Shown here in pieces: positions 7,978 through 64,000 of a stretch of 64,000 bases of DNA (position 1 is its first letter; the number at the start of each line of letters is the position of its first letter). The notes under the pieces are model-generated. The model was not told the DNA's origin. It saw only the letters and a program-made list of their open reading frames with translations, and ran no database searches. Location: IMG/VR virus record IMGVR_UViG_3300020442_000005, positions 186,001 to 250,000 of that record; one strand, given 5' to 3'. Position numbers and translations under genes: made by a program.

Positions 7978-8427
7978 ATGATGAACGAAAGAAAAGTTAT
8001 TGCAAGAATCCGAAACGCCTACAAAAAACGCCTGACCGAAGCCGTTATTGCTGGCGCGCTTGAAGAAGTTGACATGTTCGACAAACGTGGTAATATGATA
8101 TTGACACCGGATCTCAAGGTTAGACACAAGGCATCCGGATACGAATATACGATCGATCATATAGAAGGCGAAGGAGAGGACGCTGTGGTGTATCTCAGAC
8201 ATCCAGAGGAGCCAAGATTCTCAACTGCTGATGCGGAAACACCTTTAGTTGAAAAAACCAAGCTTCAAATGAAAGGTCTTAACGTTGCAAATATCTCTGG
8301 CGGAGGTATGTCTGACATGCCGGAAGAATTGTCTTTGGAAAAGCCTTCTGATGTAGAGAAAAAGGCACCGGCTTCGTTGTTGTCAATAACAAAGAAAGAG
8401 TTTGAAAACGAATACGAGGTAGAATAA
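7978..8427 (+). CDS. hypothetical protein
   Basis: In-operon ORF; its stop overlaps the next start. Confidence 0.7.
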   Translation: MMNERKVIARIRNAYKKRLTEAVIAGALEEVDMFDKRGNMILTPDLKVRHKASGYEYTIDHIEGEGEDAVVYLRHPEEPRFSTADAETPLVEKTKLQMKGLNVANISGGGMSDMPEELSLEKPSDVEKKAPASLLSITKKEFENEYEVE

Positions 8428-9110
8428 TGGATAAAACTTTGAAAGAAATGATTGCAGAAGATTTAGGACTTAAAAAAGACAAGTCTTTGAACGAATCATA
8501 TGTAACTGCTGCCAAAAAATATGATGTTACTACTGAGCTGCTTTCAAAGAAAAATATTGAGGCGCATAATCAGTTATTGGCTCAATATGTCGACGATCTA
8601 AACACAGTGTCTGCCAAACTTGATACAGTATCACGTGAGGATGCTAACCTAAACCATTCAGAGTTTAGGGGTTTGAAGATCGATGAGACCTATAATTTGA
8701 ATGCTGCCTACTTGCATGCCATGTTTTTCGAAAACATAGGAGACCCAAATTCAACAATCACTATGGATTCAATGACTTTTTTACGGCTAGAAAGAGACTT
8801 TGGTTCTTTCGATGCTTGGCAAAAAGATTTTATCGCATGTGGTCTATCGGCAAGAAACGGCTGGGCTGTAACTGTATACAACGACTTTCTTGGTAGATAC
8901 ATGAACGTTGTGGTTGATCTACATAGTTTAAACGTGCCTTTCTCTTCTAAACCTGTTATCGTATTAGATTGCTGGGAACATAGCTACTATCGTGACTATC
9001 TAAAAGATAGAAAGACATACATATACGCGATGATGAAGGAACTCAATTGGAGCCAGATTGAAAAGCGTGTTAAGATAGCTGAGAAGATAGCAAAAATTAC
9101 CAAAAAATAA
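8427..9110 (+). CDS. Fe/Mn superoxide dismutase-like protein (ChrC-like)
   Basis: LHAMFF, FGSFDAWQKDF, GWAV, LDCWEHSYY. Confidence 0.8.
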   Translation: MDKTLKEMIAEDLGLKKDKSLNESYVTAAKKYDVTTELLSKKNIEAHNQLLAQYVDDLNTVSAKLDTVSREDANLNHSEFRGLKIDETYNLNAAYLHAMFFENIGDPNSTITMDSMTFLRLERDFGSFDAWQKDFIACGLSARNGWAVTVYNDFLGRYMNVVVDLHSLNVPFSSKPVIVLDCWEHSYYRDYLKDRKTYIYAMMKELNWSQIEKRVKIAEKIAKITKK

Positions 9111-13584: not shown

Positions 13585-14166
13585 ATGTCCAAGTTAAGAA
13601 GAGTAATCCGAAAAATATTATTAGAAAGCATGACCAACAAAGCGTGGTCGTTCTTTAACCAGCAAGATGGTTTTGAACAAATGACTCGAAGAGAAGTGCC
13701 ATCAAAAGAATTGCTGAGTAGCAATAGAAATGTTTACTATGGCCGCTATATTTTAGACAACTGCCAAACTTTGTTTCAGATTGAAGAAACCGAGATATAC
13801 GACTTTGTTAATAATGAAGGTGTGCAGGTTGTATATATACATGGCTTGAGATCGACGCCACCGATGGAATGCCAGGGTAAAGGTATGGGAACACACGTGA
13901 TGAACAAGATTATGGAGTTCGCTGATTCTTTGGGCATGGGTGTCGCGGGAGAAGTTGTACCCTACGGATCCTCTAAAATGTCACGCGATGACATGAGAGC
14001 ATTTGACGCCAGGTTTGGTCTGTTTCCACTTGAACATTATTTACAGTTCCTCGATCCACTCGATGCAGCAGATGAGGACGTGATGTATGAAATTAACGAG
14101 TTTATTAATTCAAACACTGACATGGTGTGGAGACCAGCAAAAGGATCAATGCCGGAGCCACTATGA
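13585..14166 (+). CDS. GNAT-like acetyltransferase with leader MSKLRRVIRKILLES
   Basis: QGKGMG acetyl-CoA motif preceded by a beta strand (VYIHGL). Confidence 0.55.
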   Translation: MSKLRRVIRKILLESMTNKAWSFFNQQDGFEQMTRREVPSKELLSSNRNVYYGRYILDNCQTLFQIEETEIYDFVNNEGVQVVYIHGLRSTPPMECQGKGMGTHVMNKIMEFADSLGMGVAGEVVPYGSSKMSRDDMRAFDARFGLFPLEHYLQFLDPLDAADEDVMYEINEFINSNTDMVWRPAKGSMPEPL

Positions 14167-14417
14167 AAACACTACGAGAAACAATACGAAGAATCATACT
14201 CGAGACGAAGTCACACCGATGTTTGAGCGGCAAATTGGTTGATAAAGACAGTATGGAATGTTATAACGATGTTTGCATGCGTATCGAAGATATGACCTAC
14301 GAGCGTGATTTAAACAACAGAGGTACAGCAAATCGAGCTTATTACAATGGCGTTCTTTCAGATTTGCGCAAAAGAAGACGCCGCCTAGAAAAATTACATG
14401 GGATAAACAAAAGATAA
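14163..14417 (+). CDS. hypothetical protein with leader MKTLRETIRRIILET
   Basis: ATGA overlap with the upstream stop. Confidence 0.65.
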   Translation: MKTLRETIRRIILETKSHRCLSGKLVDKDSMECYNDVCMRIEDMTYERDLNNRGTANRAYYNGVLSDLRKRRRRLEKLHGINKR

Positions 14418-14479: not shown

Positions 14480-15742
14480 ATGAGAGATTTAAATTATCTG
14501 CGAAAACTCGTGATGGAGACTATTGAAGAAGATGTCAGAAAGTCTTCTAGAAATAGAAAGAGACTTTCAGAATCATCGAAGGAAAAGTTACATAAAAGAA
14601 AATTGGCCGAGGGTCTAAGAAAAGCAAAATTGCTTTTAGAAGAGGAGCAAGATGTTCCTACTGAAGTAGCTGCATCTGAAGGCGAAGGTGAAGGCGGCGG
14701 GACATCGGTTGAAAGTCTGACGACAGCTACCGACATTAATAAAGTAGATGCAAAATCACTTGCGGCCGCAATCTTCGGTGGGTCCGGTGCTGAAACGGTT
14801 TTGCAAGCAATGAAAGATGTTACAAAAGGCAAAGAGAAAGATTGGGCGACTGGCGCACTTAAAGGTAATGGCGTTACTGATGTTGACTCTATGAAGACCG
14901 CTGCTGAACAGATTTTCGGTTCGCAAGATGAGCTTGAAACGCGGATCAAAGATCTTAGCGGAATGGTAAATAATGCTACGGGATTTGCAAAGCCGGAAAT
15001 GCCAGCGTTCGAAAAAAATGATTTCGACGCAATTGCCGATGCGTTAGATGCAACCGATGGTGGCGACATGGCAGTCGACTTTGAAGCTGACTACAAAGAC
15101 GGTATAGAAGGTTTTGCAGACTACAAAAAGAGACTGGAAACAGGTGAAGGGCCATCCGGCAATCAAATGAGAAGAAAGTCCAGCACTCTTACTGATGCAG
15201 ATGAAAAAGAAGTAAAAAATGAAAGTGTATCTAGATGGGCAAAGCTTGCCGGCTTGCCGCTTCTCACTGAAATTAATAATGATCCGCGGTTTCCGTTTTC
15301 GGGAGCTGGTGAAGTTATGCCCGGCGCAAAAAATCGTAAAGATTCCAAATCAGCAAATTACGATCACTCAACAGCTTCTGGCTCTGCGAAGCAGTTTTTG
15401 GAAAAAGGCGAAGGTACTGGAGACCAGACGAAGGTAGAAAGAGCTCAAAACGCAAAAAATGCTAATCTTAAACCTACGCAAACAAACGTTAAAGCTGCAA
15501 AATCATTGCTTTTCGCTTTTTGCAATTCTGGATTAGACTTTGATGGCGCATACGCAGATCAAGAAGGCCACATACTTGATGGTCACCATCGCTGGTCCGG
15601 ACAGTATTTAAGAACGAAAGGTGAGGCAGAGCATACAAACTTGCACATCATTCACCGACCCGAAGGACAGGATGTACCAACTTTCCTAACGATGTTAACG
15701 GCTATTGGTCAAGCACTCGGACGTCCAACAAAACTCAAGTAA
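14480..15742 (+). CDS. protein with C-terminal ParB/Srx-like domain
   Basis: LKPTQ...ILDGHHRW; N-terminal LRKLVMETIEE; internal RWAKLAGL. Confidence 0.6.
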   Translation: MRDLNYLRKLVMETIEEDVRKSSRNRKRLSESSKEKLHKRKLAEGLRKAKLLLEEEQDVPTEVAASEGEGEGGGTSVESLTTATDINKVDAKSLAAAIFGGSGAETVLQAMKDVTKGKEKDWATGALKGNGVTDVDSMKTAAEQIFGSQDELETRIKDLSGMVNNATGFAKPEMPAFEKNDFDAIADALDATDGGDMAVDFEADYKDGIEGFADYKKRLETGEGPSGNQMRRKSSTLTDADEKEVKNESVSRWAKLAGLPLLTEINNDPRFPFSGAGEVMPGAKNRKDSKSANYDHSTASGSAKQFLEKGEGTGDQTKVERAQNAKNANLKPTQTNVKAAKSLLFAFCNSGLDFDGAYADQEGHILDGHHRWSGQYLRTKGEAEHTNLHIIHRPEGQDVPTFLTMLTAIGQALGRPTKLK

Positions 15743-23675: not shown

Positions 23676-23970
23676 CCACATTGCAATCCAAGTTGAGTCT
23701 ATCGAAGATTCTGTAAAATGGTATTGTGATAGATTCGGCGGTGAAATATTATACTCGGACGAAACTTGGGCAATGATAGATATGGGAAACGTAAAATTGG
23801 CATTAACGATTCCATCGCAACACCCGCCACACATTGCAATAAAAATTAAATCGATCGATGATTTTCCCAAAAACAAAAAAATAAAGACCCACCGTGACGG
23901 GTCTTTGTTTGTTTATCAATCTGACGATTGTGGTAATGTTATTGAATATATCTACTATCCAGAATCTTAA
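23668..23970 (+). CDS. VOC/glyoxalase family protein
   Basis: IDHIAIQV..IEDSVKWY..RFG; PHIAI; IEYI. Confidence 0.75.
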   Translation: MIDHIAIQVESIEDSVKWYCDRFGGEILYSDETWAMIDMGNVKLALTIPSQHPPHIAIKIKSIDDFPKNKKIKTHRDGSLFVYQSDDCGNVIEYIYYPES

Positions 23971-24572
23971 CCTTCGACTTCTGCAGCTGAGTCAACAACG
24001 CTTTCAGGTACTTGTTCACCCTCTTTGTCTCCACCCGGAAGATACTTGAGAATCATATCGATGCCTGGTACAACACTTAAAACTTCGCTCCAGGATAGAT
24101 TGCAAAGAGAATCAGCAACTTTTTCAGCCATTTCCTCCGCCGGCTCCCCAAAAATAGTTTGCAGCTTTTGCGAAAACTCTCCATCTTTATCTAATCCCAA
24201 CGTTTTTGGAATGTCCTGCACGATCAAACCTATTAGAGTTGAAGAAAACTTCTGTAGGGTTTCTTTGCAGCCACCTTTACCCATTACGATATTGGCAATA
24301 TCTTTGATACCCGATTTCTCAAAGAACTTTGTGATTGCAGTGGCACCGATTCCTTTAGGTTCAATTTTAAGCATGTCAACGACTGCTTTACCAACTGCCT
24401 TTTTAACTCCACCAAAAGCTCCATCAGCCAAATCTGTAAAGAAATCAAATATTCCTTCGTTGAGTGACCGGATTCTTTGAGTTTCTCTGTATTCCAGCAA
24501 GATTGAATGTCTTACGTATGATCTTATTTGAGATTCAATAATAAGATCTCGTCTACTTTGCGTGTAGTACAT
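23967..24572 (-). CDS. hypothetical protein (IRSYVRHSILLE motif)
   Basis: Minus-strand ORF with GAGGAG RBS. Confidence 0.65.
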   Translation of the reverse strand: MYYTQSRRDLIIESQIRSYVRHSILLEYRETQRIRSLNEGIFDFFTDLADGAFGGVKKAVGKAVVDMLKIEPKGIGATAITKFFEKSGIKDIANIVMGKGGCKETLQKFSSTLIGLIVQDIPKTLGLDKDGEFSQKLQTIFGEPAEEMAEKVADSLCNLSWSEVLSVVPGIDMILKYLPGGDKEGEQVPESVVDSAAEVEG

Positions 24573-24628: not shown

Positions 24629-25360
24629 TTATTTTTTCTTTGATGACTTCTTCTTCTTGCCACCTTTCTTTTTCTTAACTACAGCCCATGATTTTGATGG
24701 AGTAGCAGAATTAACTCTTGCATGTGCCCATTGGTGTTGTGACATCCCTTTTCGCGAACCGCTGCTCGCCCAAGCTGCAAGTCCTTTTTCGAACTCTCTA
24801 TATACGGAGCTACGGGTTAAACCACGTTTGTCTGCTTTTTTATCGAGTGATTTTTTTGTTTTGGCTGAAAGTTTTTCCAACAAAATTTTGCGAACTAATG
24901 CACGTGCATAAGCCTCGTTCTTTCGTTCCTTCTTTTCCATTTTTTCTCTCCTGTTGTATGCTCTCTGTTCCAGTTCTTTGGCCTTTCCGGTTTTGCCTTG
25001 TTTCCGAAGTTTTTTGGCTTTTTTTAAATCTTCTTGGGTTTTATCTAGTTGTTTGTCCCTTTTTGATCCTTCGGGGGCACCATATTGTTTTAAGTGTCCT
25101 GACGAATCCTTTGCAGCCTCTGTAAGTTCGTCGATTTCTTCAAGCAATTCGTCTAGTGTTTCGTCAACTTCTCGTGGCCCGCCTTCAATAGCAGCGCGCT
25201 GTCCGGATGCGCCTTTTTTTGACGTGTGGCAACCGGCTTTTACATAGCCTTGACTGTCTTTCTTTTTCTTTGTCGGACTTTTAGGTTTATACTTGAGGAC
25301 GTATTTTCCTTTTTTACCATCCGATCTAGTACAATTCTGTTTAACTGTTTTATATGGCAT
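24629..25360 (-). CDS. highly basic modular protein, probable virion protein
   Basis: K-rich; LVRKILLE motif; GLAAWASSG...HQWAHARVNS module. Confidence 0.65.
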   Translation of the reverse strand: MPYKTVKQNCTRSDGKKGKYVLKYKPKSPTKKKKDSQGYVKAGCHTSKKGASGQRAAIEGGPREVDETLDELLEEIDELTEAAKDSSGHLKQYGAPEGSKRDKQLDKTQEDLKKAKKLRKQGKTGKAKELEQRAYNRREKMEKKERKNEAYARALVRKILLEKLSAKTKKSLDKKADKRGLTRSSVYREFEKGLAAWASSGSRKGMSQHQWAHARVNSATPSKSWAVVKKKKGGKKKKSSKKK

Positions 25361-25377: not shown

Positions 25378-25776
25378 CTATCGCACGCCGTGCATTGATC
25401 TTAAGGCTTCTATGTTTGGAATCTTTTGTGCTGCATTTGGTCTCACGATAGACAAAAGAACGGCCTCTAATTGAACGCGTTCTTTTTCTTCCGGGTTGAA
25501 CATTCTGAAAGTCGGAGACATAAGTGGAGCGGAAGCTAGGTATTGTGGATCTATGCTTCGTATGAAATCTTGGAGATTTAATCCTTCAAATTCACCATTG
25601 TATCCACTAAAGGCAACCCTTGCCTTTTCGTAGAAATCTGGATATTTACTTTGGATATCAGCCCATTCTTGAAATTTGCCAAACCCGCCCATTGGTCGGT
25701 TGCCTCTTCGGCCGTAGCTAGAATTAAACGTCTCTAAAATAATTCTTCTAATTTGGGTTCTTGTTAATTTCATCAT
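25378..25776 (-). CDS. hypothetical protein with leader MKLTRTQIRRIILET
   Basis: ATGA overlap with the upstream gene. Confidence 0.65.
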   Translation of the reverse strand: MMKLTRTQIRRIILETFNSSYGRRGNRPMGGFGKFQEWADIQSKYPDFYEKARVAFSGYNGEFEGLNLQDFIRSIDPQYLASAPLMSPTFRMFNPEEKERVQLEAVLLSIVRPNAAQKIPNIEALRSMHGVR

Positions 25777-26660
25777 GAACTCCACGTCTCTGGCCGAGGA
25801 CCACCTCTGTAAAATCCTATTCTCATCTGATCAACAACATTGAAGGCTTTAGTGAATCCTTTCACCGCATCTCTCTCGTCTTGAGAATTTTTAATTAGAT
25901 GATCCATCATAGAATACTTTTCAATATCTCTCATTACGCCTTCTCTACTGGGATTTTGTCCAGCAAAACCCATGCCAGGAACTCGATTGGTCTCGGCAAC
26001 TCTTCGGAAGAACGTATAGTATCCAACTTTGTAGGCTTGGCTTCTGTTGTATCGATCCATCGTTTTAAATCTAGGAGATCCAAACATGTCATCGTAATCA
26101 AGAATATCCTGCCATGCAATGTCGAGAGCAATTGAAAGCTCTGTTGGTCGACCATTATTGTGATATGCCGACATCAGATCTGGCTGGTAGTGTTTTTGTC
26201 GAGCCTCACCTATTATGCCTTCTTCGATTATTCGCTCACCCCGAGGCATATCCTCATCGAATCCTTGTGGACCAGGGTCTGTTTTACGGTATTCGTCAAC
26301 AAGATATTCGTATGCGCCTTCTTCGAATTCTCTTTCATAGGGCGCAAAAGCATATTCATCTACGGGATGGTCATCACCATAAAACTTCATGAAGTTGTAC
26401 CCCATTATGTACGCAAACTCATAACCATCCGAATCTGCATTTAAATGTCCACCCTTGTTAAGCCAATCCATTATCTGGCCTATTAAACCTGCATGATCGA
26501 TTTTATAAGCATCTGCCAGACTAATGGCTTGCAGATGATCACTTTTTCTGCCGGTGTAGTATTGATACAATTTCTTAAGTTGATGATCTGGTATGACGTA
26601 CAGCTGTTGCTCAATTGATTCTCTAATGATCTGCCTAAGTTGTCTTTTTGTGATTTTCAT
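25773..26660 (-). CDS. hypothetical protein with leader MKITKRQLRQIIRES
   Basis: Start reassigned to the ATG 2 nt after the upstream stop. Confidence 0.7.
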   Translation of the reverse strand: MKITKRQLRQIIRESIEQQLYVIPDHQLKKLYQYYTGRKSDHLQAISLADAYKIDHAGLIGQIMDWLNKGGHLNADSDGYEFAYIMGYNFMKFYGDDHPVDEYAFAPYEREFEEGAYEYLVDEYRKTDPGPQGFDEDMPRGERIIEEGIIGEARQKHYQPDLMSAYHNNGRPTELSIALDIAWQDILDYDDMFGSPRFKTMDRYNRSQAYKVGYYTFFRRVAETNRVPGMGFAGQNPSREGVMRDIEKYSMMDHLIKNSQDERDAVKGFTKAFNVVDQMRIGFYRGGPRPETWSS

Positions 26661-26661: not shown

Positions 26662-27099
26662 TTACCATAAATCCTTGCAAGCCCAGTGTCTAGCTGAAAG
26701 TTTATTATTCTTAGTTGATTGTAAATCACACTTGTGTCTGGCTCTGAAGCTTTTTCGTCTTTTGGGATCTTTGTGCTGACTAAAATGCTGCATACCTCGA
26801 TGTCCGTAATGGATGATTTTTTCTTTCCCATCTTGACATGCTTTTACGGTTTTCTTTTTCTTACTTCCGGCAGCAGCCCTACGCGGTTTATTACATTTCA
26901 TTTTGTCTTTATCAAGTTTCTTCTTTTTTGCTTCGTCGACATCAGCTTCCCGAAGATCTGTCTCGTTTTTTGGAACGCAGTTTGGCACAAGTCGGTTTCC
27001 TTTTTTCTTCATTCCAACTTGCTTGTGGCTCTTCCAACAGGCTTCAAGAATTACTGTTCTGATTGCTCTTCGCAGCTTCATTTCATTTCTATAATTCAT
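26662..27099 (-). CDS. basic Cys/His-containing modular protein
   Basis: LRRAIRTVILE, CWKSHKQVGMKKKGNRLVPNCVP, RKSFRARHKC..WACKDLW. Confidence 0.7.
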   Translation of the reverse strand: MNYRNEMKLRRAIRTVILEACWKSHKQVGMKKKGNRLVPNCVPKNETDLREADVDEAKKKKLDKDKMKCNKPRRAAAGSKKKKTVKACQDGKEKIIHYGHRGMQHFSQHKDPKRRKSFRARHKCDLQSTKNNKLSARHWACKDLW

Positions 27100-33500: not shown

Positions 33501-33501
33501 A

Positions 33502-37454: not shown

Positions 37455-37455
37455 C

Positions 37456-41828: not shown

Positions 41829-41902
41829 GCATCCATAGCTCAGCTGGATAGAGCATCCGCCTTCTAAGCGGACGGTCGCAGGTTCGAATCCTGCTGGATG
41901 TA
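41829..41902 (+). tRNA. tRNA-Arg (UCU)
   Basis: Cloverleaf; tccgc-cttctaa-gcgga. Confidence 0.95.
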
Positions 41903-41906
41903 CTTT

Positions 41907-41978
41907 TGGTCTGTAGTGTAATAGGTAACACACCAGTTTTTGGCACTGGCGTTCTAGGTTCAAGTCCTGGCAGACCAG
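41907..41978 (+). tRNA. tRNA-Gln (UUG)
   Basis: tggtctg/cagacca acceptor; ccagt-ttttggc-actgg. Confidence 0.92.
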
Positions 41979-42017
41979 CTTTTATACAACTTTAAACAAT
42001 AGGGTATTATTATTTAT

Positions 42018-42120
42018 GGGTCTAGTTAACCTCGAGGGTTCGAACCCCTCTATGACCAAGCAGGCAGGGAGCAATGACTAGATGTCGCCAACAGAAAGAT
42101 ATTCACCAGTATCTCCTTTT
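42018..42120 (+). ncRNA. candidate structured RNA containing an isolated T arm
   Basis: gaggg-ttcgaac-ccctc inside an outer stem tctagtta/tgactaga; promoter-like sequence upstream and terminator-like hairpin plus T run downstream. Confidence 0.45.
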
Positions 42121-42189
42121 GGTTGATAAGCCTTGGGATAGGAAAGTGGTGAGTCCTATCCCAAAGTTCCATCCTTAACTTCATCACAC

Positions 42190-42262
<73 letters not shown>

Positions 42263-42265
42263 TAG

Positions 42266-42338
42266 GCGGGAATAGCTCAGTTGGTAGAGCACCACGTTGC
42301 CAACGTGGAAGTCGCGAGTTCAAGTCTCGTTTCCCGCT
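42266..42338 (+). tRNA. tRNA-Gly (GCC)
   Basis: Cloverleaf; ccacg-ttgccaa-cgtgg. Confidence 0.95.
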
Positions 42339-42343
42339 CTTTT

Positions 42344-42416
42344 GGACACTTAGCTCAGCGGTCAGAGCATCCGACTCATAATCGGCAGGTCCAGGGTTCA
42401 ATCCCCTGAGTGTCCA
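42344..42416 (+). tRNA. tRNA with CAU anticodon (Met or lysidine-modified Ile2)
   Basis: Cloverleaf; loop ctcataa; G1-C72 paired, so not an initiator. Confidence 0.9.
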
Positions 42417-42421
42417 CTTTC

Positions 42422-42562: not shown

Positions 42563-43420
42563 ATGATCGGACATACACCATTCATCTGTATTGACAATGA
42601 TGAAAGAATATGGGCAAAACTAGAAACACACAATAAAACCGGATCTGTAAAAGATCGAATGATTGATTACATATGCGATAATGCTCTTGCAAATGGTGCA
42701 ATCATTCCTGGAAAGACCCGGCTCATTGAGGCAACCAGTGGAAATACTGGAATTGCTTTAGCCAGTTATGCAGCCTCAGTGGGATGCAAATGCCAAATCA
42801 TAATGCCATGTAACATGTCGGAAGAAAGAAAACAAATGATGCATGCGTTCGGCGCCGAAATTATAGAAACCGGCCCAAACGAATTTGGACGTGCAATTGC
42901 GATGAGAGACTTGAAACTGCGGAAGTCTAACCCCGGAGAATATTTCTCGCCTCTTCAATTTAGTAATCCTTTAAATGTGGAATGTCACAGAACAACCACA
43001 GCGCCAGAGATTCACCAGAACATAACAGACATTAAGTGTCTCGCTTGGGATGCATTCGTGCATGGCTCTGGAACTGGAGGGACTATGATGGGATTGAAGA
43101 GTTACATTGATGAGAATAGGTTAGGAGTGAAATGCGTCTTAACTCAGCCGGAAGAAGATAACGCATCCCATGGAATACAGGGCATTAACGATGGTGCTGA
43201 TTTTCTATTAGATAAGTCATTGATGGATGAGTTTATATACGTGAAGACGTCCTCAGCAATTGAACGAATGAAGAGATTCTGGAAAGAAAATGGTATCCTG
43301 ATCGGCATCAGTTCCGGGGCAAACATTCTGGCTGCAGAAGAATACGTGAGAAAGCATGATCCAGCTGGAATCGTCGTCACTATTTTATGTGATCGTGGAG
43401 AAAGATATTTAAAATGTTGA
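42563..43420 (+). CDS. cysK: cysteine synthase (PLP-dependent, CysK/CysM family)
   Basis: KLE..NKTGSVKDR, EATSGNTG, GSGTGGT, HGIQGI, GISSGAN, DRGERYL. Confidence 0.88.
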   Translation: MIGHTPFICIDNDERIWAKLETHNKTGSVKDRMIDYICDNALANGAIIPGKTRLIEATSGNTGIALASYAASVGCKCQIIMPCNMSEERKQMMHAFGAEIIETGPNEFGRAIAMRDLKLRKSNPGEYFSPLQFSNPLNVECHRTTTAPEIHQNITDIKCLAWDAFVHGSGTGGTMMGLKSYIDENRLGVKCVLTQPEEDNASHGIQGINDGADFLLDKSLMDEFIYVKTSSAIERMKRFWKENGILIGISSGANILAAEEYVRKHDPAGIVVTILCDRGERYLKC

Positions 43421-49494: not shown

Positions 49495-49578
49495 AAACTG
49501 AAAAGTTTACCTTTTCACTGAACCATACTTATAAATAGGGGGAGGGCAGCACGCAATACCTATTTTGGGTATGGTTCT

Positions 49579-49995
49579 TTGCTGGCATCAATGGATTTTA
49601 GGGAAAATGATCTAGTTGTAATAAAGGGCATGAAATATTCCGCGGATAAGGAAGAGATAGTTGCAGAAATATACAGAATATTATTTGTGGGTCTACACGA
49701 TTTAATAGTAATCTCGAGAAAAAAGTATGGTAAAGTACCATTCAAGATCTCAAAATCTTCTTGCATATCTTTAAGAACAAAAATCAAAGAGACTAATCCA
49801 ACAGGTGAAAATGAAATTAAACTAGGGTCACTTGTGCTTGGGATCGACGTAAATTATGATGGATCGATCCAAAAGAAAGTAGTTGGACATGTCATACAAA
49901 TTATTGAAAACCACAACTCGATGAAATACTATGTCATCAATTCAGATAACAAGGACACAATGTTCGAAAAAGACAAGGTTTTATTGTTGCAGTAG
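49579..49995 (+). CDS. hypothetical protein (start uncertain)
   Basis: ORF after a TATAAATA element. Confidence 0.55.
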   Translation: MLASMDFRENDLVVIKGMKYSADKEEIVAEIYRILFVGLHDLIVISRKKYGKVPFKISKSSCISLRTKIKETNPTGENEIKLGSLVLGIDVNYDGSIQKKVVGHVIQIIENHNSMKYYVINSDNKDTMFEKDKVLLLQ

Positions 49996-50016
49996 GTGTC
50001 AACTATATATTTATAA

Positions 50017-51420: not shown

Positions 51421-51825
51421 ATGAAGATTACAAAGAGCCAATTAAAAAGAATCATTCGAGAAGAATACACACGACTTATGCACAGTGGTTTACTAGCTGA
51501 AACTAATTACATGGCTATGGGTGCTCCATACGACAGTCAATTATTTGCCGATTGGTGCGATGCAGTAGACAGCTTGTACGATGACGTTCCATCTTGGACT
51601 ACCAACGCGTTAGGGTACCTTTGGGAACAAGACATTGAAGAAATGTTAGATGAAGACGGGAATTATTATGTTAAGACCTTGTTTGCATCAACTGGCGCTT
51701 ACGATGGTTGTGCATCTCTTGTGAAGTTGGCTATGGATAACGGATCAAAACCTAGACACGTAGAGTACCTTATGAATAAATTCTTAAAATTCGCAAGAGA
51801 AGAGCAAGGATACACTGTCGTCTAA
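51421..51825 (+). CDS. leader-motif protein MKITKSQLKRIIREEY
   Basis: Start 2 nt after the upstream stop. Confidence 0.75.
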   Translation: MKITKSQLKRIIREEYTRLMHSGLLAETNYMAMGAPYDSQLFADWCDAVDSLYDDVPSWTTNALGYLWEQDIEEMLDEDGNYYVKTLFASTGAYDGCASLVKLAMDNGSKPRHVEYLMNKFLKFAREEQGYTVV

Positions 51826-51906
51826 AGACTGCATTTAATCTCATGAAAAAAGTGTATCCGGACTGTCTGAATTAATTTAAAAACCATTCAACAAAGAGCC
51901 AGTCAT

Positions 51907-52287
51907 ATGAAAATATCAAAACGACAACTCAGAAGAATAATCAAAGAAGAATACTCACGACTTGCCCGGCATGGACTTATCAAAGAGGCGAACGAATTTT
52001 ATGTAAGTGCAAGCGACCCGATCGTGATGGAAATTATCGATATTGCAAAAGATGCAGTGCAGCGTGGTAAGCCGGGTATCACATATCAAGATATTGAGTA
52101 TGCATTTTACGAGGCTGCTGAGCCTGATGAGTTCGTTCATCCGGTTAGCTATGAAGACATCGACTTTGTAACGTCAATGAACGAGATGGATATTGAGAGT
52201 TTTTTGAATCACTTGGCTGGCATGGGTGTCCTGAGGTTGGTTTCAAGCCCTAGTAGCCGAGTTGCTATGTACGCAGCTGCCGTATAG
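51907..52287 (+). CDS. leader-motif protein MKISKRQLRRIIKEEY
   Basis: Shared leader. Confidence 0.75.
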   Translation: MKISKRQLRRIIKEEYSRLARHGLIKEANEFYVSASDPIVMEIIDIAKDAVQRGKPGITYQDIEYAFYEAAEPDEFVHPVSYEDIDFVTSMNEMDIESFLNHLAGMGVLRLVSSPSSRVAMYAAAV

Positions 52288-52296
52288 AGAGACAAA

Positions 52297-53421
52297 ATGT
52301 CAGAAAAAATACTTAGAGAGTATATAAAAGGCCTTTTGCTGAGTAATTCTGACGTCCTTCTTGAGAGGGCTAAAAGAAAAAAAGCCAGACAGAACAATAT
52401 AGATAAAGAGATAATGGCTGCAGCCAAATCAGCTGAAGCTGAAGGGCAGAGTTTTACTAGTCAATATTTTGCTGGCTACATTATGGATTCATATCCAGAT
52501 TTTACTCATGTCCGCAGCCGAAAAGACAAAAATTATCTAAATGACCTAGCTGAAGAACCAATAAGCTTGCAGGCGCTTCTGGACAGCTTGGTTGATTTTG
52601 ATTTGCTAGAAGTGACCGGCCAGCAGAATAATTTTAAAATATATTCGATAACTGGCCGGCCCAAAACAAAACCGGATATTAAGAGGGGTGATTTTAACGG
52701 AGCCTCCGAGCAAGAGTTTTATAATTATCTCCAGGAAATCTTAGATTCGGATAGTTATTTGACTGATATGAAAGAGGCCATGGAGCATTTCGGCGGCGGT
52801 CTTTTGTTTGATCTTTTCGTTAAAAATCAAAATCCTGCATTTACGAGAAAAGTGACCCCACCCCAGGGTACTGATAACCGAACTGATAAATTAATAGACT
52901 ATTCGACTATGTTTGATTTAAACGGCGCATTAGCTCGAAACGAATGGAGTGCGGTACTTACTCCTCAATTCAAATTCAGAAATAATAGTAGGACAAAGAA
53001 AGTAAGGGGAGTTTTTGTCCGCTTCAATCACGTGCATTCTCTAATGGAACCATGGCAACTTCTTATTCGAATGGTTGATAAGGCAATTTTTGATTTCCTT
53101 AAGAGTCGACCAACATTTGCAAATAAGGAAGAGTTTAGATTACGACTTTTAGATTCGTTCTGGCAGTTTCCGCTCGAGGTTGATGCCGGCGGTTTACACT
53201 TAGAATTGACAAATTTGCCGATTCCTGGAAAACCATATTACTTTCATACCGCTGATGTGTTGACATCAGCAAATATAAATAAAGCAATCTCATGGCTTGA
53301 CTCGAATGGAACTGACCCTGAAGATCAAATATATCTGGTGCTTCGTAACGCAAACAACGAAACAGTGGTAAATCGAATATCTCAGGCCGCCAAACATAAA
53401 CAAAAAGAAGAAGCCAGATAA
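52297..53421 (+). CDS. hypothetical protein (ILREYIKGLLL leader variant)
   Basis: 374-aa ORF. Confidence 0.7.
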   Translation: MSEKILREYIKGLLLSNSDVLLERAKRKKARQNNIDKEIMAAAKSAEAEGQSFTSQYFAGYIMDSYPDFTHVRSRKDKNYLNDLAEEPISLQALLDSLVDFDLLEVTGQQNNFKIYSITGRPKTKPDIKRGDFNGASEQEFYNYLQEILDSDSYLTDMKEAMEHFGGGLLFDLFVKNQNPAFTRKVTPPQGTDNRTDKLIDYSTMFDLNGALARNEWSAVLTPQFKFRNNSRTKKVRGVFVRFNHVHSLMEPWQLLIRMVDKAIFDFLKSRPTFANKEEFRLRLLDSFWQFPLEVDAGGLHLELTNLPIPGKPYYFHTADVLTSANINKAISWLDSNGTDPEDQIYLVLRNANNETVVNRISQAAKHKQKEEAR

Positions 53422-53450
53422 AATATCATTAAATTAAAATTGGAGTTCAA

Positions 53451-53645
53451 GTGATTAAAGTAGGAAATCAAGTAAGTTTATTCAACAACATCGGAAAAGA
53501 AGGCATCGTCATTGGCCTTAAACCCGTAAAGATCAACACAAGTTTTACCAACGGTACAGCCACAAATTCATGGGCAATTATTATACAGTGGAAAGACGGA
53601 ACAACAGGTACATATCCTATTGGCGATGTAATGAGAATAGACTAA
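53451..53645 (+). CDS. small SH3-like hypothetical protein
   Basis: GGAG RBS, GTG start; IKVGNQV. Confidence 0.6.
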   Translation: MIKVGNQVSLFNNIGKEGIVIGLKPVKINTSFTNGTATNSWAIIIQWKDGTTGTYPIGDVMRID

Positions 53646-53731
53646 TTTTTTTTTGGATATATAAAATTTAATTTATAATTAATATAGAACATCAACCACC
53701 AATTATTTTCATGGAACATAAGGAAAATAAA

Positions 53732-54046
53732 ATGAAAGTATCAAAAAGACAATTGAAAAGAATCATTCGAGAAGAATATTCAAGGCTAAAACGATCTGGA
53801 CTTCTTAACGAAGCCATGGGACTAGGTAACGACATGTATGTCGAGCAAATCATGGAAGAGCTTCGTGATGGTGACGAACTGTCCTATATGGAATTATCAA
53901 GAGCATTGAGTCCAATCATACCAGGCTTTGATGAAGCTGAATTAGGAAATGCAATTGATCACGCTTTGCAAAGGGGAATGATTCAAGCTCGTATGGGAAG
54001 AGATGGATTAGGCGTGTTTATGGTGTCACCCCAGTACATGATGTAA
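53732..54046 (+). CDS. leader-motif protein MKVSKRQLKRIIREEY
   Basis: AAGGA RBS; shared leader. Confidence 0.75.
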   Translation: MKVSKRQLKRIIREEYSRLKRSGLLNEAMGLGNDMYVEQIMEELRDGDELSYMELSRALSPIIPGFDEAELGNAIDHALQRGMIQARMGRDGLGVFMVSPQYMM

Positions 54047-54070
54047 ATAACTTACATTTGCCTGATTTAA

Positions 54071-54095
54071 AATAGACGCTTCGGCGTCTATTTCT
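54071..54095. terminator. hairpin terminator with UUCG loop
   Basis: aatagacgc-ttcg-gcgtctatt. Confidence 0.75.
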
Positions 54096-54136
54096 AATTT
54101 GTTTGTATACTTATAATTATACGGGGGTAATTATGT

Positions 54137-54361: not shown

Positions 54362-54594
54362 ACGCTCACAGCTTTATTTATCTGACTATAGGCAGCCTTG
54401 TGTACTATGGTCCAGTAACAAATGTCGGGAAAGAGCGGCATATCGGCATAATTATCGATGCGAACTATTCTAATATTGTCGCTGGTGAATGCATATTCCA
54501 CGTATACGCTGACGGTAATATAATAGAGACAGCCATTGTTTATCCAGTTGCAGAGGAAGTTTTACATGAAAAAATTGTACGAATCGAGTCTTGA
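54244..54594 (+). CDS. hypothetical protein (true start probably further downstream)
   Basis: IGSLV...HIGII SH3-like core. Confidence 0.45.
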   Translation: MAAGFVRKIFKRIKRKLYNNRHTRNETRMSYIYDPEGVLDAHSFIYLTIGSLVYYGPVTNVGKERHIGIIIDANYSNIVAGECIFHVYADGNIIETAIVYPVAEEVLHEKIVRIES

Positions 54595-57414: not shown

Positions 57415-58101
57415 ATGATTTTAACTAGAAGCGAATTAAGATATCTTATAAAAGAGGCCGTTGAACAGAAACAGGCAAATGAGTTGGAAAAAAGATATGA
57501 TCAATTTTTCGACAAGGCCGAAGTAGCTGGAGCAGATTTCCTTGAAGATCTTGCTAAAGAAATGAAAGCCGCGGCCGCAGAAGAAAGCCAGAGCTTAGAC
57601 GAAGTGGATCCAATTATTTTGGGTGCCAGTTTCGCCGCAGCAATGCCTATTCTAATGAAGGGAGTTGAGAAGCTTATTGCGTCTATAGCTTCAGGTCTGA
57701 AGGGTATCGATAATTTAGTGATAGGTCGTGGACGGCTTTACGATGCTGGCGAGCGAATGGATCAATGGGTTGATTGGTGGGCAACAAAATCTGAGGAACT
57801 TCATCATGCTTATATTGGTGGAATCGAAAAAATAATCGATGCAGCTTGTTTTATAACTCGCAAAAACCCACCGCAAGAAAGTCGTCACAAAGCAGCTAAA
57901 GCAATATGGACAATGATTGTCGCGTATTTAATGGTTCAGTCTGGAATCGGTGTTCTTAAAGCTGTCGGTCATCACGCTTATGGTATTGCCGGTATTGAAG
58001 GAGTTTTAGCAACGATTAAAGCCGGAGAGATTGGCGTATACCTTTACGACGTGTTTGAAACTCTACTGGCCGCCGGGACTGTGGCGGTTTTAGCAACATA
58101 A
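57415..58101 (+). CDS. leader-motif protein MILTRSELRYLIKEA with hydrophobic C-terminal half
   Basis: Leader motif; Ala/Gly-rich helices. Confidence 0.7.
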   Translation: MILTRSELRYLIKEAVEQKQANELEKRYDQFFDKAEVAGADFLEDLAKEMKAAAAEESQSLDEVDPIILGASFAAAMPILMKGVEKLIASIASGLKGIDNLVIGRGRLYDAGERMDQWVDWWATKSEELHHAYIGGIEKIIDAACFITRKNPPQESRHKAAKAIWTMIVAYLMVQSGIGVLKAVGHHAYGIAGIEGVLATIKAGEIGVYLYDVFETLLAAGTVAVLAT

Positions 58102-62445: not shown

Positions 62446-63252
62446 ATGAAAAATTATGTTTTAAGAAAAATCATATCAAATTTGATTGTTGAGAACTTTA
62501 AGGTCAGAGGTTATATAAAGCCGGCTGAGAGTTTTCACTCCCTTGGCGAATTACAGGCCATGGCAAATTATGTTTTAAATCTTCAGCGTGCTGGCTATGA
62601 CGCGAGGGATAAAAATTCTGGACTGTTATTGAATTTGCTCTACGAATATATGCCCCATATTGAAGACGATATAGAAAGATACGGTGCGAGATTTGACATA
62701 ACAAATGTATATAACTTTTTAGAAGATTTTGCAAACCATCGAGTCTGGTCCTTTGAAGACCAGTTTGGCCAATATTTCCCGGACATAGGTAGTTTAAGAT
62801 TCTCGTATTTTTATTCTAGGGGAGACATGGAACCATATGTGCTTCTGGATGAGAACTACACAAAGCAATTGTATGGATCCACAGATAATGTATACACTGT
62901 GAAACATTATACTACCGAAGCTGGATTGCAAAACATAGAAGCATCAATCCAAACTGGAAAACCTTTTGATATATCATGCTTCACTGCCATGAAAAAGGAA
63001 TACTTTGACAAGAAATCAAATATTTTATTGACGCTCAAAGGTAACGTGAGGGCTGGCTTTAGATCTGACGTAAAATCTTTTGCTGTCGACAACGGTAGGA
63101 GAGCATGCAACTTATTTAGACTCGGATATCCGGGGGAAGAAACAAATATCTGCGAAAACTTAGATGGATGCGAAGACAATGCTACGTCTATTTGGAATGA
63201 ATATATCGCGACACCATTAGAAATTATCAAAGTAGAGGTATTAAACAGATGA
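62446..63252 (+). CDS. leader-variant protein, possible ADP-ribosyltransferase fold
   Basis: LRKIISNLIVE leader; KHYTT..GL..I, DISCFT, WNEYI. Confidence 0.4.
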   Translation: MKNYVLRKIISNLIVENFKVRGYIKPAESFHSLGELQAMANYVLNLQRAGYDARDKNSGLLLNLLYEYMPHIEDDIERYGARFDITNVYNFLEDFANHRVWSFEDQFGQYFPDIGSLRFSYFYSRGDMEPYVLLDENYTKQLYGSTDNVYTVKHYTTEAGLQNIEASIQTGKPFDISCFTAMKKEYFDKKSNILLTLKGNVRAGFRSDVKSFAVDNGRRACNLFRLGYPGEETNICENLDGCEDNATSIWNEYIATPLEIIKVEVLNR

Positions 63253-63605
63253 GAACATGGAAACCATTATTTTTTGAAAACAGTTCGCTGCCATTGATTC
63301 TTTCCGTAGTGGCGCCAATTGATATCGGAGCTATCACACTTGGACCATTCGTATTTTCGCGTGGAGAAATGTCTGAGGTCACTAAAAATCATGAAGCAAT
63401 CCATTGGCAGCAATATATAGAAACCGGGATTATTGGTTTTGTGTTGCTATACTTGCTTTACTGGGTGATTGGTTTGATAAAATACAGAGATGGACAAAAG
63501 GCATACTACCAGATACCCTTTGAACAAGAGGCATATGAAAATCACGAGGATATGGAATATTGCCTAACCAGAAAAAGATATGAATGGTTCCGGAGAAGCA
63601 TCTAA
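63249..63605 (+). CDS. HExxH metallopeptidase-like membrane protein
   Basis: NHEAIHWQQ, TM segment, PFEQEAY. Confidence 0.6.
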   Translation: MRTWKPLFFENSSLPLILSVVAPIDIGAITLGPFVFSRGEMSEVTKNHEAIHWQQYIETGIIGFVLLYLLYWVIGLIKYRDGQKAYYQIPFEQEAYENHEDMEYCLTRKRYEWFRRSI

Positions 63606-64000
63606 TGTGGCAGCTAAGAAAATACATACGGAATTTATTGTTTGAAAATTTATCAGACGCAACTATTCCACCTCCACCAAAGGAATCAATCGAAGAGTTA
63701 AGTTCGGTTATTAACCAGTACTACGACCGTGTTAACGATGATTCTGTTCAGTACGATTTAGACGAAAGGATGGAATTGCTGTTTAACGAAGTGGTCGAAA
63801 AGAACAGTGGGGAAAACGTTGTTGAATATGTCAAGGAACTAAAGACGCATCCACTGGAAATAGTGTCAGCACTCAAGGAATACTTTGCAAGAAAAAGACC
63901 CGAAGATGTCGCCGCAGATTTTGGTATTGACTGGAAGAGTGATAGCGTTGATATGAAAACTATTAACAACAGTTATTCATATCCATCCGGTCACACTGCT
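63605..64000 (+). CDS. PAP2-family phosphatase, truncated by the window end (not in ORF track)
   Basis: TAATG coupling; leader LRKYIRNLLFE; LKEYFARKRP and YPSGH motifs. Confidence 0.75.
   Translation, partial: MWQLRKYIRNLLFENLSDATIPPPPKESIEELSSVINQYYDRVNDDSVQYDLDERMELLFNEVVEKNSGENVVEYVKELKTHPLEIVSALKEYFARKRPEDVAADFGIDWKSDSVDMKTINNSYSYPSGHTA

What the first reader, a model, noticed from the sequence alone, without database searches (positions are those of the whole stretch)
51421..54046. Shared N-terminal basic amphipathic leader on many unrelated proteins: candidate head-targeting/processing signal
Seen: near-identical leaders on otherwise unrelated ORFs at 51421 (MKITKSQLKRIIREEYTRL..SGLLAE), 51907 (MKISKRQLRRIIKEEYSRL..HGLIKE) and 53732 (MKVSKRQLKRIIREEYSRL..SGLLNE). 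Looser versions occur at 26660- (MKITKRQLRQIIRES), 25776- (MKLTRTQIRRIILE), 27099- (LRRAIRTVILE), 13585, 14163, 14480, 52297, 57415, 62446 and 63605, and internally in the 24629 and 23967 genes. Almost all end in (I/L)-x-E. Established: the T4 prohead protease gp21 cleaves after (I/L)-x-E, and a short N-terminal capsid targeting sequence directs T4 internal proteins into the head. Inference: a modular zip-code that loads cargo into the capsid.
Basis: partly seen in the sequence, partly recalled or inferred. Interest (0 to 1): 0.75.

Follow-up and report, generated by a model that had tools for sequence, protein, structure and literature searches.

The report
Shared N-terminal tag on phage proteins
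About fifty otherwise unrelated proteins of an uncultured 273-kb marine T4-like jumbo phage start with the same short basic peptide ending in Ile/Leu-x-Glu; this is most likely a cleavable tag that loads them into the phage head, a hugely expanded version of the T4 capsid targeting sequence, but no experiment has tested it.

Summary
The three leaders at 51421, 51907 and 53732 match a degenerate 42-nt pattern found 4 times in the window (0 in shuffles).

- **Extent.** The window lies in a 273,025-bp marine virus contig. At least 54 ORFs (about 16% of genes) begin with this basic leader, whose hydrophobic-x-Glu ends at residue 13-19.
- **Bodies.** They fall into 42 BLAST-unrelated groups. These include an Alt/Mod-type ADP-ribosyltransferase, a PAP2 phosphatase, GNAT-like paralogues and winged-helix-like proteins.
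- **Selection.** Conservation is at protein level.
- **Head link.** The genome has a T4-type head module with a gp21-family (Peptidase_S77) protease. Its scaffold-like proteins are enriched only for Leu/Ile-x-Glu. Two conserved small head-module proteins carry the same kind of N-terminus.
- **Distribution.** Relatives carry 3-38 copies each, with cassette turnover. A leader profile hits 5,059 protein clusters in metagenomes. Every sufficiently complete leader-bearing contig tested has the S77 protease.

The capsid-targeting and cleavage reading is therefore the best explanation (about 0.55), but it rests on circumstantial evidence. No proteomic, cleavage or binding data exist, and the co-folding job gave no answer. 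No paper held the motif strings.

The parts
51421..51825 (+). Leader protein 1 (134 aa). Core leader 51421-51462 (14 aa, ..RIIRE). Extended leader to 51501 (27 aa, ..GLLAE).
51907..52287 (+). Leader protein 2 (126 aa). Leader 51907-51987 (..RIIKE, ..GLIKE). Predicted N-terminal helix, a disordered linker holding the second site, and a winged-helix-like body.
53732..54046 (+). Leader protein 3 (104 aa). Leader 53732-53812 (..RIIRE, ..GLLNE).
52297..53421 (+). 374-aa protein with a degenerate B-type N-terminus (..ILREYIKGLLLS..VLLE).
57415..58101 (+). 228-aa protein with a loose leader MILTRSELRYLIKE.
62446..63252 (+). 268-aa protein with a loose leader MKNYVLRKIISNLIVE, preceded by a promoter-like motif at 62408.
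63605..64000 (+). Start of a 525-aa protein that runs off the window. It has a B-type leader MWQLRKYIRNLLFE and a PAP2 phosphatase domain. It precedes the run of B-type leader genes that extends to genome 263,662 (one intervening gene, 251,182-252,393, carries only an internal leader-like stretch).
13585..14166 (+). 193-aa protein with leader MSKLRRVIRKILLE.
14163..14417 (+). 84-aa protein with leader MKTLRETIRRIILE.
14480..15742 (+). 420-aa protein with a loose leader MRDLNYLRKLVME, preceded by a promoter-like motif at 14420.
25378..25773 (-). 131-aa protein with leader MKLTRTQIRRIILE.
25773..26660 (-). 295-aa protein with leader MKITKRQLRQIIRE. The true start is 26660.
26662..27099 (-). 145-aa Lys-rich basic protein with a leader-like ..MKLRRAIRTVILE and a DUF5754 match.
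8427..9110 (+). Fe/Mn superoxide dismutase with an extra N-terminal stretch MDKTLKEMIAE. This resembles the T4 CTS MKTYQEFIAE in form.
23967..24572 (-). 201-aa protein with N-terminal ..RRDLIIE and ..SILLE, preceded by a promoter-like motif at 24607.
24629..25360 (-). 243-aa Lys-rich protein with an internal leader-like ..ALVRKILLE and a DUF5824 match.
49524..50015 (+). Two copies (49524, 50006) of the intergenic motif (C/T)ATA(A/C/T)TTAT(A/T) at the head of the co-directional gene run that ends with the three focal genes.
54070..54121 (+). A terminator-like hairpin (54070-54093 plus a T-rich tail) closes that unit. It is followed directly by promoter-like motifs at 54106-54121 for the next unit (944-aa protein, then the 57415 gene).

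Best explanation
The leader is a cleavable head-targeting propeptide, working like the T4 capsid targeting sequence (CTS). Its basic core (M-K-I/L-T/S-K/R-x-Q-L-R/K-R/K-I-I) would dock the newly made protein onto the acidic scaffolding core on which the shell assembles. The invariant hydrophobic-x-Glu at residues 12-14, and a second L/I-x-Glu at about 21-27 in the extended subtypes, would be the site where the gp21-family prohead protease cuts. Cutting frees the body inside the head, so that it is delivered into the cell with the DNA. The tag is portable. It sits on about 42 unrelated bodies in this genome (ADP-ribosyltransferase, PAP2 phosphatase, GNAT-like paralogues, winged-helix-like small proteins), and the cassettes turn over between close relatives. 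Shown: the motif, its restriction to N-termini, protein-level selection, unrelated bodies, the T4-type head module and protease, the same kind of N-terminus on conserved head-module proteins, and co-occurrence with the protease. Inferred: docking, cleavage, packaging and injection.
For: (1) Scale and position. 28 strict HMM hits, 26 at ORF N-termini. 44 of 333 N-termini match a loose pattern against about 4 expected. The basic-hydrophobic core alone occurs 55 times in the first 15 residues against 37 times in all internal positions, and is followed by hydrophobic-x-E in 75% against 30%. (2) Protein-level selection. Upstream DNA is 30% identical, and codon positions 1+2 are 79% identical against 63% for position 3. 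Invariant I11 and I12 use 3 codons each, and L8 uses 5. (3) Bodies form 42 BLAST components among 53, with different folds and families: ADP-ribosyltransferase, PAP2, GNAT-like (a lead only), winged-helix-like (weak). (4) T4-type head module: TerL, gp20 portal, Peptidase_S77 protease (E 8e-27), gp23 capsid protein. (5) In the four scaffold/core-like proteins of that module, X-x-E is enriched only for X = L (29 against 10.8, z 6.1) and I (13 against 5.8, z 3.3), not A/S/G. Their L/I-x-E density is 3.3-5.4 per 100 aa against 1.17 genome-wide. (6) Two conserved small proteins just downstream of the protease carry leader-type N-termini across relatives: MAKVKRSVLKEIVKECLVEIL.. in 57 of 80 loci and ..KLTPALLRKIVLEEKAKLME.. 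in 43 of 80. Three leader genes directly follow the capsid gene. (7) The ADP-ribosyltransferase orthologues in relatives (~185 aa) start directly with the leader (MKLLRETIRRILLE|AF..). This parallels T4 Alt, a CTS-bearing, gp21-processed, packaged ADP-ribosyltransferase (PMC5694885, PMC9026906). (8) Of 15 leader-bearing IMG/VR contigs chosen by size, 11 encode Peptidase_S77, including all 9 with estimated completeness of 57% or more. T4-like phages S-PM2 and RM378 have no copy. (9) Homologous bodies carry either A-type or B-type leaders, and syntenic relatives hold different leader cassettes at the same place. This matches the hypervariable internal-protein loci of T-even phages (PMC3012670). 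(10) The promoter-like motif found upstream of portal, scaffold and tail genes also heads most leader-containing units.
Against: There is no direct evidence of cleavage, packaging or binding. The co-folding of the scaffold-like protein with the 51907 protein gave no answer (ipSAE 0.00). Leader-protein bodies are not depleted in L/I-x-E (85 observed against 76 expected, the same ratio as other proteins). That would be expected if folded state did not protect them from the protease. Most bodies are acidic (pI 4-6), unlike the basic T4 internal proteins. The leader is not alignable to the T4 CTS: it is longer and has net charge +4/+5 against -1. L/I-x-E enrichment in scaffold-like proteins could partly reflect coiled-coil heptads. 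Roughly fifty different cargo species is many, though SPN3US heads hold about 50 proteins (PMC5694885). The timing of the promoter-like motif is inferred, not measured, and it also precedes some non-structural genes. The base rate of S77 among large marine viral contigs was not measured.
Confidence: 0.55

Rival explanations
1. The leader is a docking helix for some other common partner that has nothing to do with the capsid, such as a host factor, a phage hub protein or an oligomerisation partner. The arrays would then be host-takeover genes that are not packaged.
For: Arrays of small, fast-evolving genes are typical of phage host-takeover regions. Several arrays lie next to replication or nucleotide-metabolism genes rather than structural genes, for example genome 170-175 kb and 9.4-11.5 kb, with no promoter-like motif nearby. 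Bodies are mostly acidic. The closest T4-like match of the ADP-ribosyltransferase is ModA, which is not packaged.
Against: This reading does not explain the invariant hydrophobic-x-Glu at a fixed position. It also does not explain the same kind of N-terminus on conserved proteins inside the head module, the leader genes directly after the capsid gene, or the co-occurrence with Peptidase_S77.
Confidence: 0.2
2. Leader proteins are themselves expendable parts of the prohead core (an inner scaffold or inner body). The protease degrades them and the fragments are expelled, so they are not delivered cargo.
For: Bodies contain L/I-x-E at the normal frequency. The leader type is shared with core-module proteins that are very rich in L/I-x-E. 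T4 gp22, gp67 and gp68 are cut into small fragments (PMC5694885).
Against: Bodies include enzymes with intact catalytic motifs: the ADP-ribosyltransferase R / S-x-S / E-x-E and the PAP2 motifs. Such enzymes would have no purpose as disposable scaffold. The gene content also turns over between relatives, unlike essential scaffold parts.
Confidence: 0.1
3. The leader is a membrane-binding amphipathic helix that holds these proteins at the inner membrane.
For: It is predicted helical and cationic. PAP2 enzymes usually act at membranes. T4 prohead assembly starts on the membrane (PMC5694885).
Against: Mean hydrophobicity is very low (-0.5 to -0.6) and the hydrophobic moment is unremarkable, reached by 10-36% of shuffles. 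The pLDDT of the helix is low. The conserved Glu residues would serve no purpose for membrane binding.
Confidence: 0.05
4. The conservation is at RNA level: either a translation-initiation region kept unstructured and A-rich, or the operator of a translational regulator such as T4 RegA.
For: Leader codons are more A-rich than the genome average: AAA 18 of 19 Lys at position 2, ACA 12 of 14 Thr, AGA 14 of 15 Arg at position 6, against body usage of 0.67, 0.38 and 0.42. Phage tRNAs read AGA, CAA, ACA and TTA. The in-frame upstream 'E-x-K-M' in fused metagenome ORFs is a translated Shine-Dalgarno spacer.
Against: Invariant residues are encoded by several synonymous codons (L8 by 5, I11 and I12 by 3 each). 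Third positions diverge more than first and second, and upstream DNA is not conserved. A-type and B-type leaders differ in nucleotide sequence but share the residue pattern.
Confidence: 0.05

Closest known systems
T4 capsid targeting sequence (CTS) of internal proteins IPI/IPII/IPIII and Alt, cut by prohead protease gp21
   Same: A short N-terminal propeptide ending in Ile/Leu-x-Glu. It sits on non-homologous, fast-turning-over proteins. The genome encodes a gp21-family protease and a T4-type portal, scaffold and capsid module. The cargo set includes an Alt/Mod-family ADP-ribosyltransferase.
   Different: The sequence is not alignable to MKTYQEFIAE. It is longer (14 aa, or up to 27 with a second site) and strongly basic (+4/+5 against -1). 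There are about 54 carriers per genome rather than a handful, and most bodies are acidic rather than basic. Function is untested.
Propeptides of phiKZ / 201phi2-1 / SPN3US inner-head and ejection proteins
   Same: Jumbo phages in which many head-internal proteins are processed after Glu by a gp21-related protease. Paralogues keep conserved N-termini (SPN3US gp53/gp54).
   Different: Those proteases cut at (S/A/G)-x-E and the propeptides are often more than 100 residues. Here the P3 residue is Ile/Leu, A/S/G-x-E is not enriched, and the head genes are T4-type.
Encapsulin cargo-loading peptides and P22 scaffold-based cargo targeting
   Same: A short portable peptide that directs unrelated cargo into an HK97-fold shell.
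   Different: Those tags are usually C-terminal, are not cleaved and bind the shell protein directly. No protease is involved.
N-terminal adaptor or marker domains of polymorphic effectors (e.g. T6SS MIX/FIX-type markers)
   Same: A conserved N-terminal marker on many unrelated effector bodies, arranged in arrays with rapid cassette exchange.
   Different: Those markers are folded domains used by a secretion machine of cells. Here it is a peptide of about 14 residues in a virus. This is an analogy only.

Membership tests
T4-type capsid targeting sequence (CTS) | N-terminal propeptide of about 10-19 residues | tested here: met
   The hydrophobic-x-E ends at residue 13-19, mostly 14, in 50 of 53 curated leaders. 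26 of 28 strict HMM hits are at ORF N-termini.
T4-type capsid targeting sequence (CTS) | Ends in the gp21 cleavage motif (Leu/Ile)-x-Glu | tested here: met
   I12 and E14 are (near-)invariant. 75% of N-terminal basic cores are followed by hydrophobic-x-E against 30% of internal ones.
T4-type capsid targeting sequence (CTS) | Is actually removed by the prohead protease | not testable with these tools
   No virion proteome exists: the phage is uncultured, and only marine DNA metagenomes hold it.
T4-type capsid targeting sequence (CTS) | Is sufficient to carry a protein into the prohead core | not testable with these tools
   Co-folding with the scaffold-like protein gave no answer.
T4-type capsid targeting sequence (CTS) | Genome encodes a gp21-family protease with T4-type portal and capsid proteins | tested here: met
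   Peptidase_S77 E 8e-27, Portal_T4 E 9e-78, Gp23 E 8e-76. PHROG matches to head maturation protease, portal and major head protein.
T4-type capsid targeting sequence (CTS) | Carried by non-homologous, variable cargo proteins | tested here: met
   42 BLAST components among 53 bodies. Different cassettes in a syntenic relative.
T4-type capsid targeting sequence (CTS) | Sequence similarity to the T4 CTS MKTYQEFIAE | tested here: not met
   Only the MK start and I-x-E end are shared. Length and charge differ. One window protein (8427, MDKTLKEMIAE) resembles it in form.
phiKZ/SPN3US-type head propeptides | Cleavage motif with a small residue, (S/A/G)-x-Glu | tested here: not met
   Leaders end in I/L/V/M-x-E. 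In scaffold-like proteins A, S and G at P3 are not enriched (A 5 against 10.2, S 1 against 8.7, G 6 against 5.4).
Sec or Tat signal peptide | Hydrophobic h-region after the charged n-region | tested here: not met
   Directly from the sequence: the core is followed by E-E and charged residues, and mean hydrophobicity is -0.5 to -0.6.
Membrane-targeting amphipathic helix | High hydrophobic moment with a broad non-polar face | tested here: inconclusive
   Hydrophobic moment 0.31-0.51, reached by 10-36% of shuffles. Helix predicted at low pLDDT.
Alt/ModA/ModB ADP-ribosyltransferases (for the cargo at genome 174903-175757) | R / S-x-S / E-x-E catalytic motifs and the ADP-ribosyltransferase fold | tested here: met
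   phrog_832 E 3e-8. tblastn to T4-like ModA-type genes. LFRG, TSLS and EAEW aligned to a ModA-annotated protein of Klebsiella phage F48. Foldseek E 2e-6, probability 1.00, to R-S-E ADP-ribosyltransferases.

The most novel reading that the evidence does not exclude
The leader is a universal, portable packaging tag of a cosmopolitan lineage of marine 'far-T4' phages (genomes about 100-300 kb). On this reading it marks a large polymorphic repertoire of proteins injected with the DNA. At least 5,059 protein clusters (at 50% identity) would be identifiable from sequence alone, and the short leader-coding microhomology (exact matches up to 29 nt) could help cassettes exchange.
Probability: 0.4. Interest if true: 0.8.

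Novelty: new variant of a known kind. Interest (0 to 1): 0.66.

Why it matters
If the tag works as proposed, every protein that a large and abundant group of uncultured marine phages loads into its head could be listed from sequence alone. That amounts to thousands of candidate injected enzymes and anti-defence proteins. It would show that the T4 CTS principle has been scaled up from a handful of proteins to about a sixth of a genome. It would also provide a second, sequence-unrelated packaging tag for engineering cargo delivery in T4-type capsids. If it does not work this way, a 14-residue peptide conserved on more than 5,000 protein families still needs an explanation.

Tried and rejected
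(1) Pfam and PHROGs on the three focal proteins and their neighbours gave no families.

(2) Megablast of the region and tblastn of the 51907 protein against 50,697 phage records gave no match. The leader alone is too short for BLAST statistics.

(3) Full-text searches for twelve leader strings found nothing relevant.

(4) Depletion of L/I-x-E in leader-protein bodies, expected if they must survive the protease, was not seen: 85 observed against 76 expected.

(5) Co-folding of the scaffold-like protein with the 51907 protein gave 'no answer' and is not evidence either way.

(6) Many of the best metagenome hits carry 2-3 leaders in one ORF, and I first read the conserved 'hydrophobic-x-E-G/S-K-M' before internal leaders as a second cleavage site. 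I rejected this. Position -1 is Met in 73% and Val in 11% (start codons), and the Glu at -4 is the in-frame translation of a GGAG Shine-Dalgarno, as in this genome's own upstream regions. These ORFs are best read as fused or adjacent cassettes.

(7) The idea that all bodies are diverged paralogues of one family is rejected, because they include an ADP-ribosyltransferase, a PAP2 phosphatase and GNAT-like and winged-helix-like predicted folds.

(8) Cellular origin is rejected. The strict DNA pattern occurs in only 11 stretches of 185,579 species genomes. All are in MAG contigs of inconsistent taxonomy, and one 306-kb contig holds 20 copies, which looks like mis-binned phage.

(9) No RNA run holds the region, so transcript ends could not be mapped.
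Full report
**Observation.** A degenerate back-translation of the first 14 codons matches four times in the window, the fourth at 26660 on the minus strand. None is expected in 100 dinucleotide-preserving shuffles. Beyond residue 30 the proteins share no BLASTP similarity. There are two small corrections. The leader-like stretch of the 23967 gene is N-terminal, not internal. The 26660 gene starts at 26660, directly after the stop of the 27099 gene.

**Genome context.** The window is bases 186,001-250,000 of a single 273,025-bp virus contig with 40% G+C. Only marine DNA metagenomes hold it. The genome encodes a T4-type head module at 120.9-132.4 kb:
- large terminase;
- gp20 portal (E 9e-78);
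- a gp21-family prohead protease (Peptidase_S77, E 8e-27);
- gp23 major capsid protein (E 8e-76).

The nearest cultured relatives by capsid protein are Flavobacterium phage immuto, Microcystis phage Mel-JY01 and Rhodothermus phage RM378, at 42-48% identity. Two uncultured 'huge phage' assemblies (LR756508 at 47% identity, LR756511 at 39%) also rank among the best hits. IMG/VR holds 520 contigs encoding relatives of the protease (tblastn E <= 1e-3); the 80 best listed are 72-91% identical, and several are 240-295 kb. This is therefore a widespread, uncultured 'far-T4' jumbo phage lineage.

**Extent of the leader.**
- A profile built from the strict copies finds 28 hits in the genome. 26 are at ORF N-termini, three of them with GTG starts.
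- A looser pattern matches 44 of 333 predicted N-termini. About 4 are expected from shuffled N-termini (maximum 10), and 1.2% of internal 30-residue windows match.
- After correcting start codons I count 54 carriers, about 16% of genes.
- There are two main types. Type A is MKITKRQLRRIIKE, with optional extensions EEYSRLKRQGLIxE or EEKAKLIxE. Type B is MKNLRQYIRKILLTE, carried by a run of mostly paralogous genes from window 63605 to genome 263,662.
- The basic-hydrophobic core by itself occurs 55 times within the first 15 residues against 37 times in all internal positions of the proteome. It is followed by hydrophobic-x-Glu in 75% of N-terminal cases against 30% of internal ones.
- Leaders have pI 10-12, while most bodies are acidic.

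**Level of selection.**
- Upstream DNA is not conserved (30% identity).
- First and second codon positions are more alike than third positions (79% against 63%).
- Invariant Ile11 and Ile12 use three codons each, and Leu8 uses five.
- Codon choice is more A-rich than elsewhere in the genome. Phage tRNAs read AGA, CAA, ACA and TTA.

An RNA-level layer for efficient initiation probably exists, but it cannot explain the residue pattern.

**Bodies.** The 53 bodies compared by BLAST form 42 components. One family of eight paralogues mixes A-type and B-type leaders, which suggests the two types are interchangeable.

| Body | Location | Evidence |
|---|---|---|
| ADP-ribosyltransferase of the T4 Alt/Mod family | genome 174903-175757 | phrog_832 E 3e-8; tblastn to ModA-type genes; R, S-x-S and E-x-E motifs; Foldseek E 2e-6 to R-S-E transferases |
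| PAP2 phosphatase | window 63605 | E 1e-11 |
| GNAT-like family of eight paralogues | B-type array, plus 133826 | lead only |
| Winged-helix-like body of the 51907 protein | window 51907 | weak, Foldseek E 0.04 |
| Fe/Mn superoxide dismutase with an extra N-terminus MDKTLKEMIAE | window 8427 |; resembles the T4 CTS MKTYQEFIAE in form |

In both predicted structures the leader is a separate N-terminal helix of low confidence. In the 51907 protein a disordered linker carries the second L/I-x-Glu site.

**Link to the head.**
- In 57 of 80 relatives' head loci, a conserved protein of about 145 residues just downstream of the protease begins MAKVKRSVLKEIVKECLVEIL.. .
- In 43 of 80, a protein of about 95 residues carries ..KLTPALLRKIVLEEKAKLME.., which matches the A-type leader with its EEKAKL extension. 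Both genes exist in this genome (126392, 126898).
- Three leader genes directly follow the capsid gene (132445, 133186, 133592), and two more there start with GTG.
- The scaffold-like protein (579 aa, pI 4.6) has long poly-Asp/Glu stretches interspersed with Leu. It is a plausible partner for a basic leader, but that is inference only.
- In the four scaffold/core-like proteins, X-x-Glu is enriched only for X = Leu (z 6.1) and Ile (z 3.3), not for Ala, Ser or Gly. Their density is 3.3-5.4 per 100 residues against 1.17 genome-wide. This fits T4 gp21 specificity rather than the phiKZ type, although coiled-coil heptads may contribute.
- The protease itself has LQE at residue 10, as T4 gp21 has LIE at 9 (PMC9026906).

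**Distribution.**
- Nine related or leader-bearing contigs searched carry 3-38 A-type matches each, usually in arrays.
- LR756508 has ten weak matches. Immuto and Mel-JY01 have three and one. RM378 and cyanophage S-PM2 have none.
- A leader profile hits 5,059 representatives of 50%-identity clusters among 1.84 billion proteins at E <= 0.001.
- The strict DNA pattern is in more than 118 IMG/VR stretches.
- Of 15 such contigs chosen by size alone, 11 encode Peptidase_S77. That includes all nine estimated at 57% complete or more; the four without it are 23-50% complete.
- Among 185,579 prokaryote species genomes the pattern occurs only in a few MAG contigs that look like mis-binned phage.
- The syntenic region of a close relative holds different leader cassettes between the same flanking genes.
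- The ADP-ribosyltransferase orthologues in relatives start directly with a B-type leader.

**Transcription units (inferred).** A near-palindromic motif, (C/T)ATA(A/C/T)TTAT(A/T), is concentrated in intergenic DNA: 49 of 73 sites fall in 9% of the genome. It lies 25-80 nt upstream of the portal, scaffold, core and tail genes. It also heads most leader-containing units. These include window 49524/50006, which lead to the three focal genes; a strong terminator-like hairpin at 54070-54093 closes that unit. The motif also precedes some non-structural genes, so a 'late' assignment is tentative.

**Negative and inconclusive results.**
- Bodies are not depleted in L/I-x-Glu.
- Co-folding gave no answer.
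- The hydrophobic moment of the leader is unremarkable and its mean hydrophobicity is low. This weakens both the word 'amphipathic' and the membrane-anchor rival.
- Multi-leader ORFs in metagenomes keep start-codon residues and a translated Shine-Dalgarno before each internal leader. They are fused or adjacent cassettes, not evidence of polyprotein processing.

**Comparison with what is known.** In T4, a 10-19-residue N-terminal CTS ending in Ile-x-Glu targets the internal proteins and Alt to the scaffolding core and is removed by gp21. Residues 4 and 7 matter for targeting, and 8 and 10 for processing. T-even phages carry diverse internal proteins that share only the CTS (PMC3012670; PMC9026906; PMC5694885). 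The present leader matches this logic in position, end motif, protease family, cargo diversity and the ADP-ribosyltransferase cargo. It differs in sequence, length, charge and above all in scale. It does not fit the phiKZ/SPN3US type, which has small-residue-x-Glu sites and long propeptides. No paper in the searchable library contains the motif strings.

**Verdict.** I class it as a new variant of a known kind of system. Interest is moderately high because of the scale and because it makes the content of uncultured phage heads predictable from sequence.

Noticed in passing
window 32517-38784: A complete methyl-cycle block in a phage: SAM synthetase (32517-33500), a five-domain B12-dependent methionine synthase of 1171 aa (33939-37454) and S-adenosylhomocysteine hydrolase (37456-38784).
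   Followed up: partly
window 19120-21528: A phage-encoded Cpn60/GroEL-type chaperonin (19120-20709) sits next to a sigma-70-family factor with regions 1.2 and 2 (20827-21528).
   Followed up: partly
window 41147-42417: Six tRNA genes: Leu-TAA, Arg-TCT, Gln-TTG, Thr-TGT, Gly-GCC and Met-CAT. Four of them read exactly the A-ending codons (TTA, AGA, CAA, ACA) that dominate the leader.
   Followed up: partly
window 28518, 59207, 60221, 61430; genome 21501, 22077, 182128, 264639: A second conserved upstream element, about 30 nt (..AAATTATATATGTAAGGAGAAACCTTGCA..), sits 25-55 nt before a different set of small genes. None of them carries the strict leader. It may be another promoter class with a structured 5' leader.
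   Followed up: no
window 8427-9110: An Fe/Mn superoxide dismutase with an extra N-terminal stretch of about 20-38 residues beginning MDKTLKEMIAE and a further LNE at residue 24. It lies in a run of genes (5503-15742) headed by the promoter-like motif.
   Followed up: partly
window 24629-25360(-) and 26662-27099(-): Two very Lys-rich basic proteins matching DUF5824 (E 5e-7) and DUF5754 (E 4e-8), in a minus-strand island among plus-strand genes. Their basic composition resembles T4 internal proteins more than the acidic leader bodies do.
   Followed up: no
proteins P0031-P0179 (metagenome clusters): Many metagenome ORFs hold two or three leader-body units in one reading frame, each internal unit keeping a start-codon residue and an in-frame Shine-Dalgarno. 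Whether these are true fusions, lost stops or recoded stops was not resolved.
   Followed up: partly
window 54566-57400: A 944-aa protein with no Pfam or PHROG family follows a promoter-like motif. In one relative it is split into genes of 319 and 806 aa.
   Followed up: no
L226/L231/L232 (NHDW01000006.1, 305,838 bp): A contig filed as a 'Methylococcaceae bacterium' MAG holds 20 strict leader copies and is probably a jumbo phage of this clade binned with a bacterium. A 101-kb contig of a 'Halobacteriovorax' MAG looks the same.
   Followed up: no
genome 128606-130345 (L007:8606-10345): The scaffold-like protein has extreme poly-Asp/Glu tracts with a repeated ADYNNE unit. In one relative its N-terminus is almost pure Asp/Leu.
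   Followed up: no
window 27203-28141 and 42563-43420: A UvdE UV-damage endonuclease (E 1e-58) and a PLP-dependent enzyme of the cysteine-synthase type (E 2e-54), both encoded by the phage.
   Followed up: no
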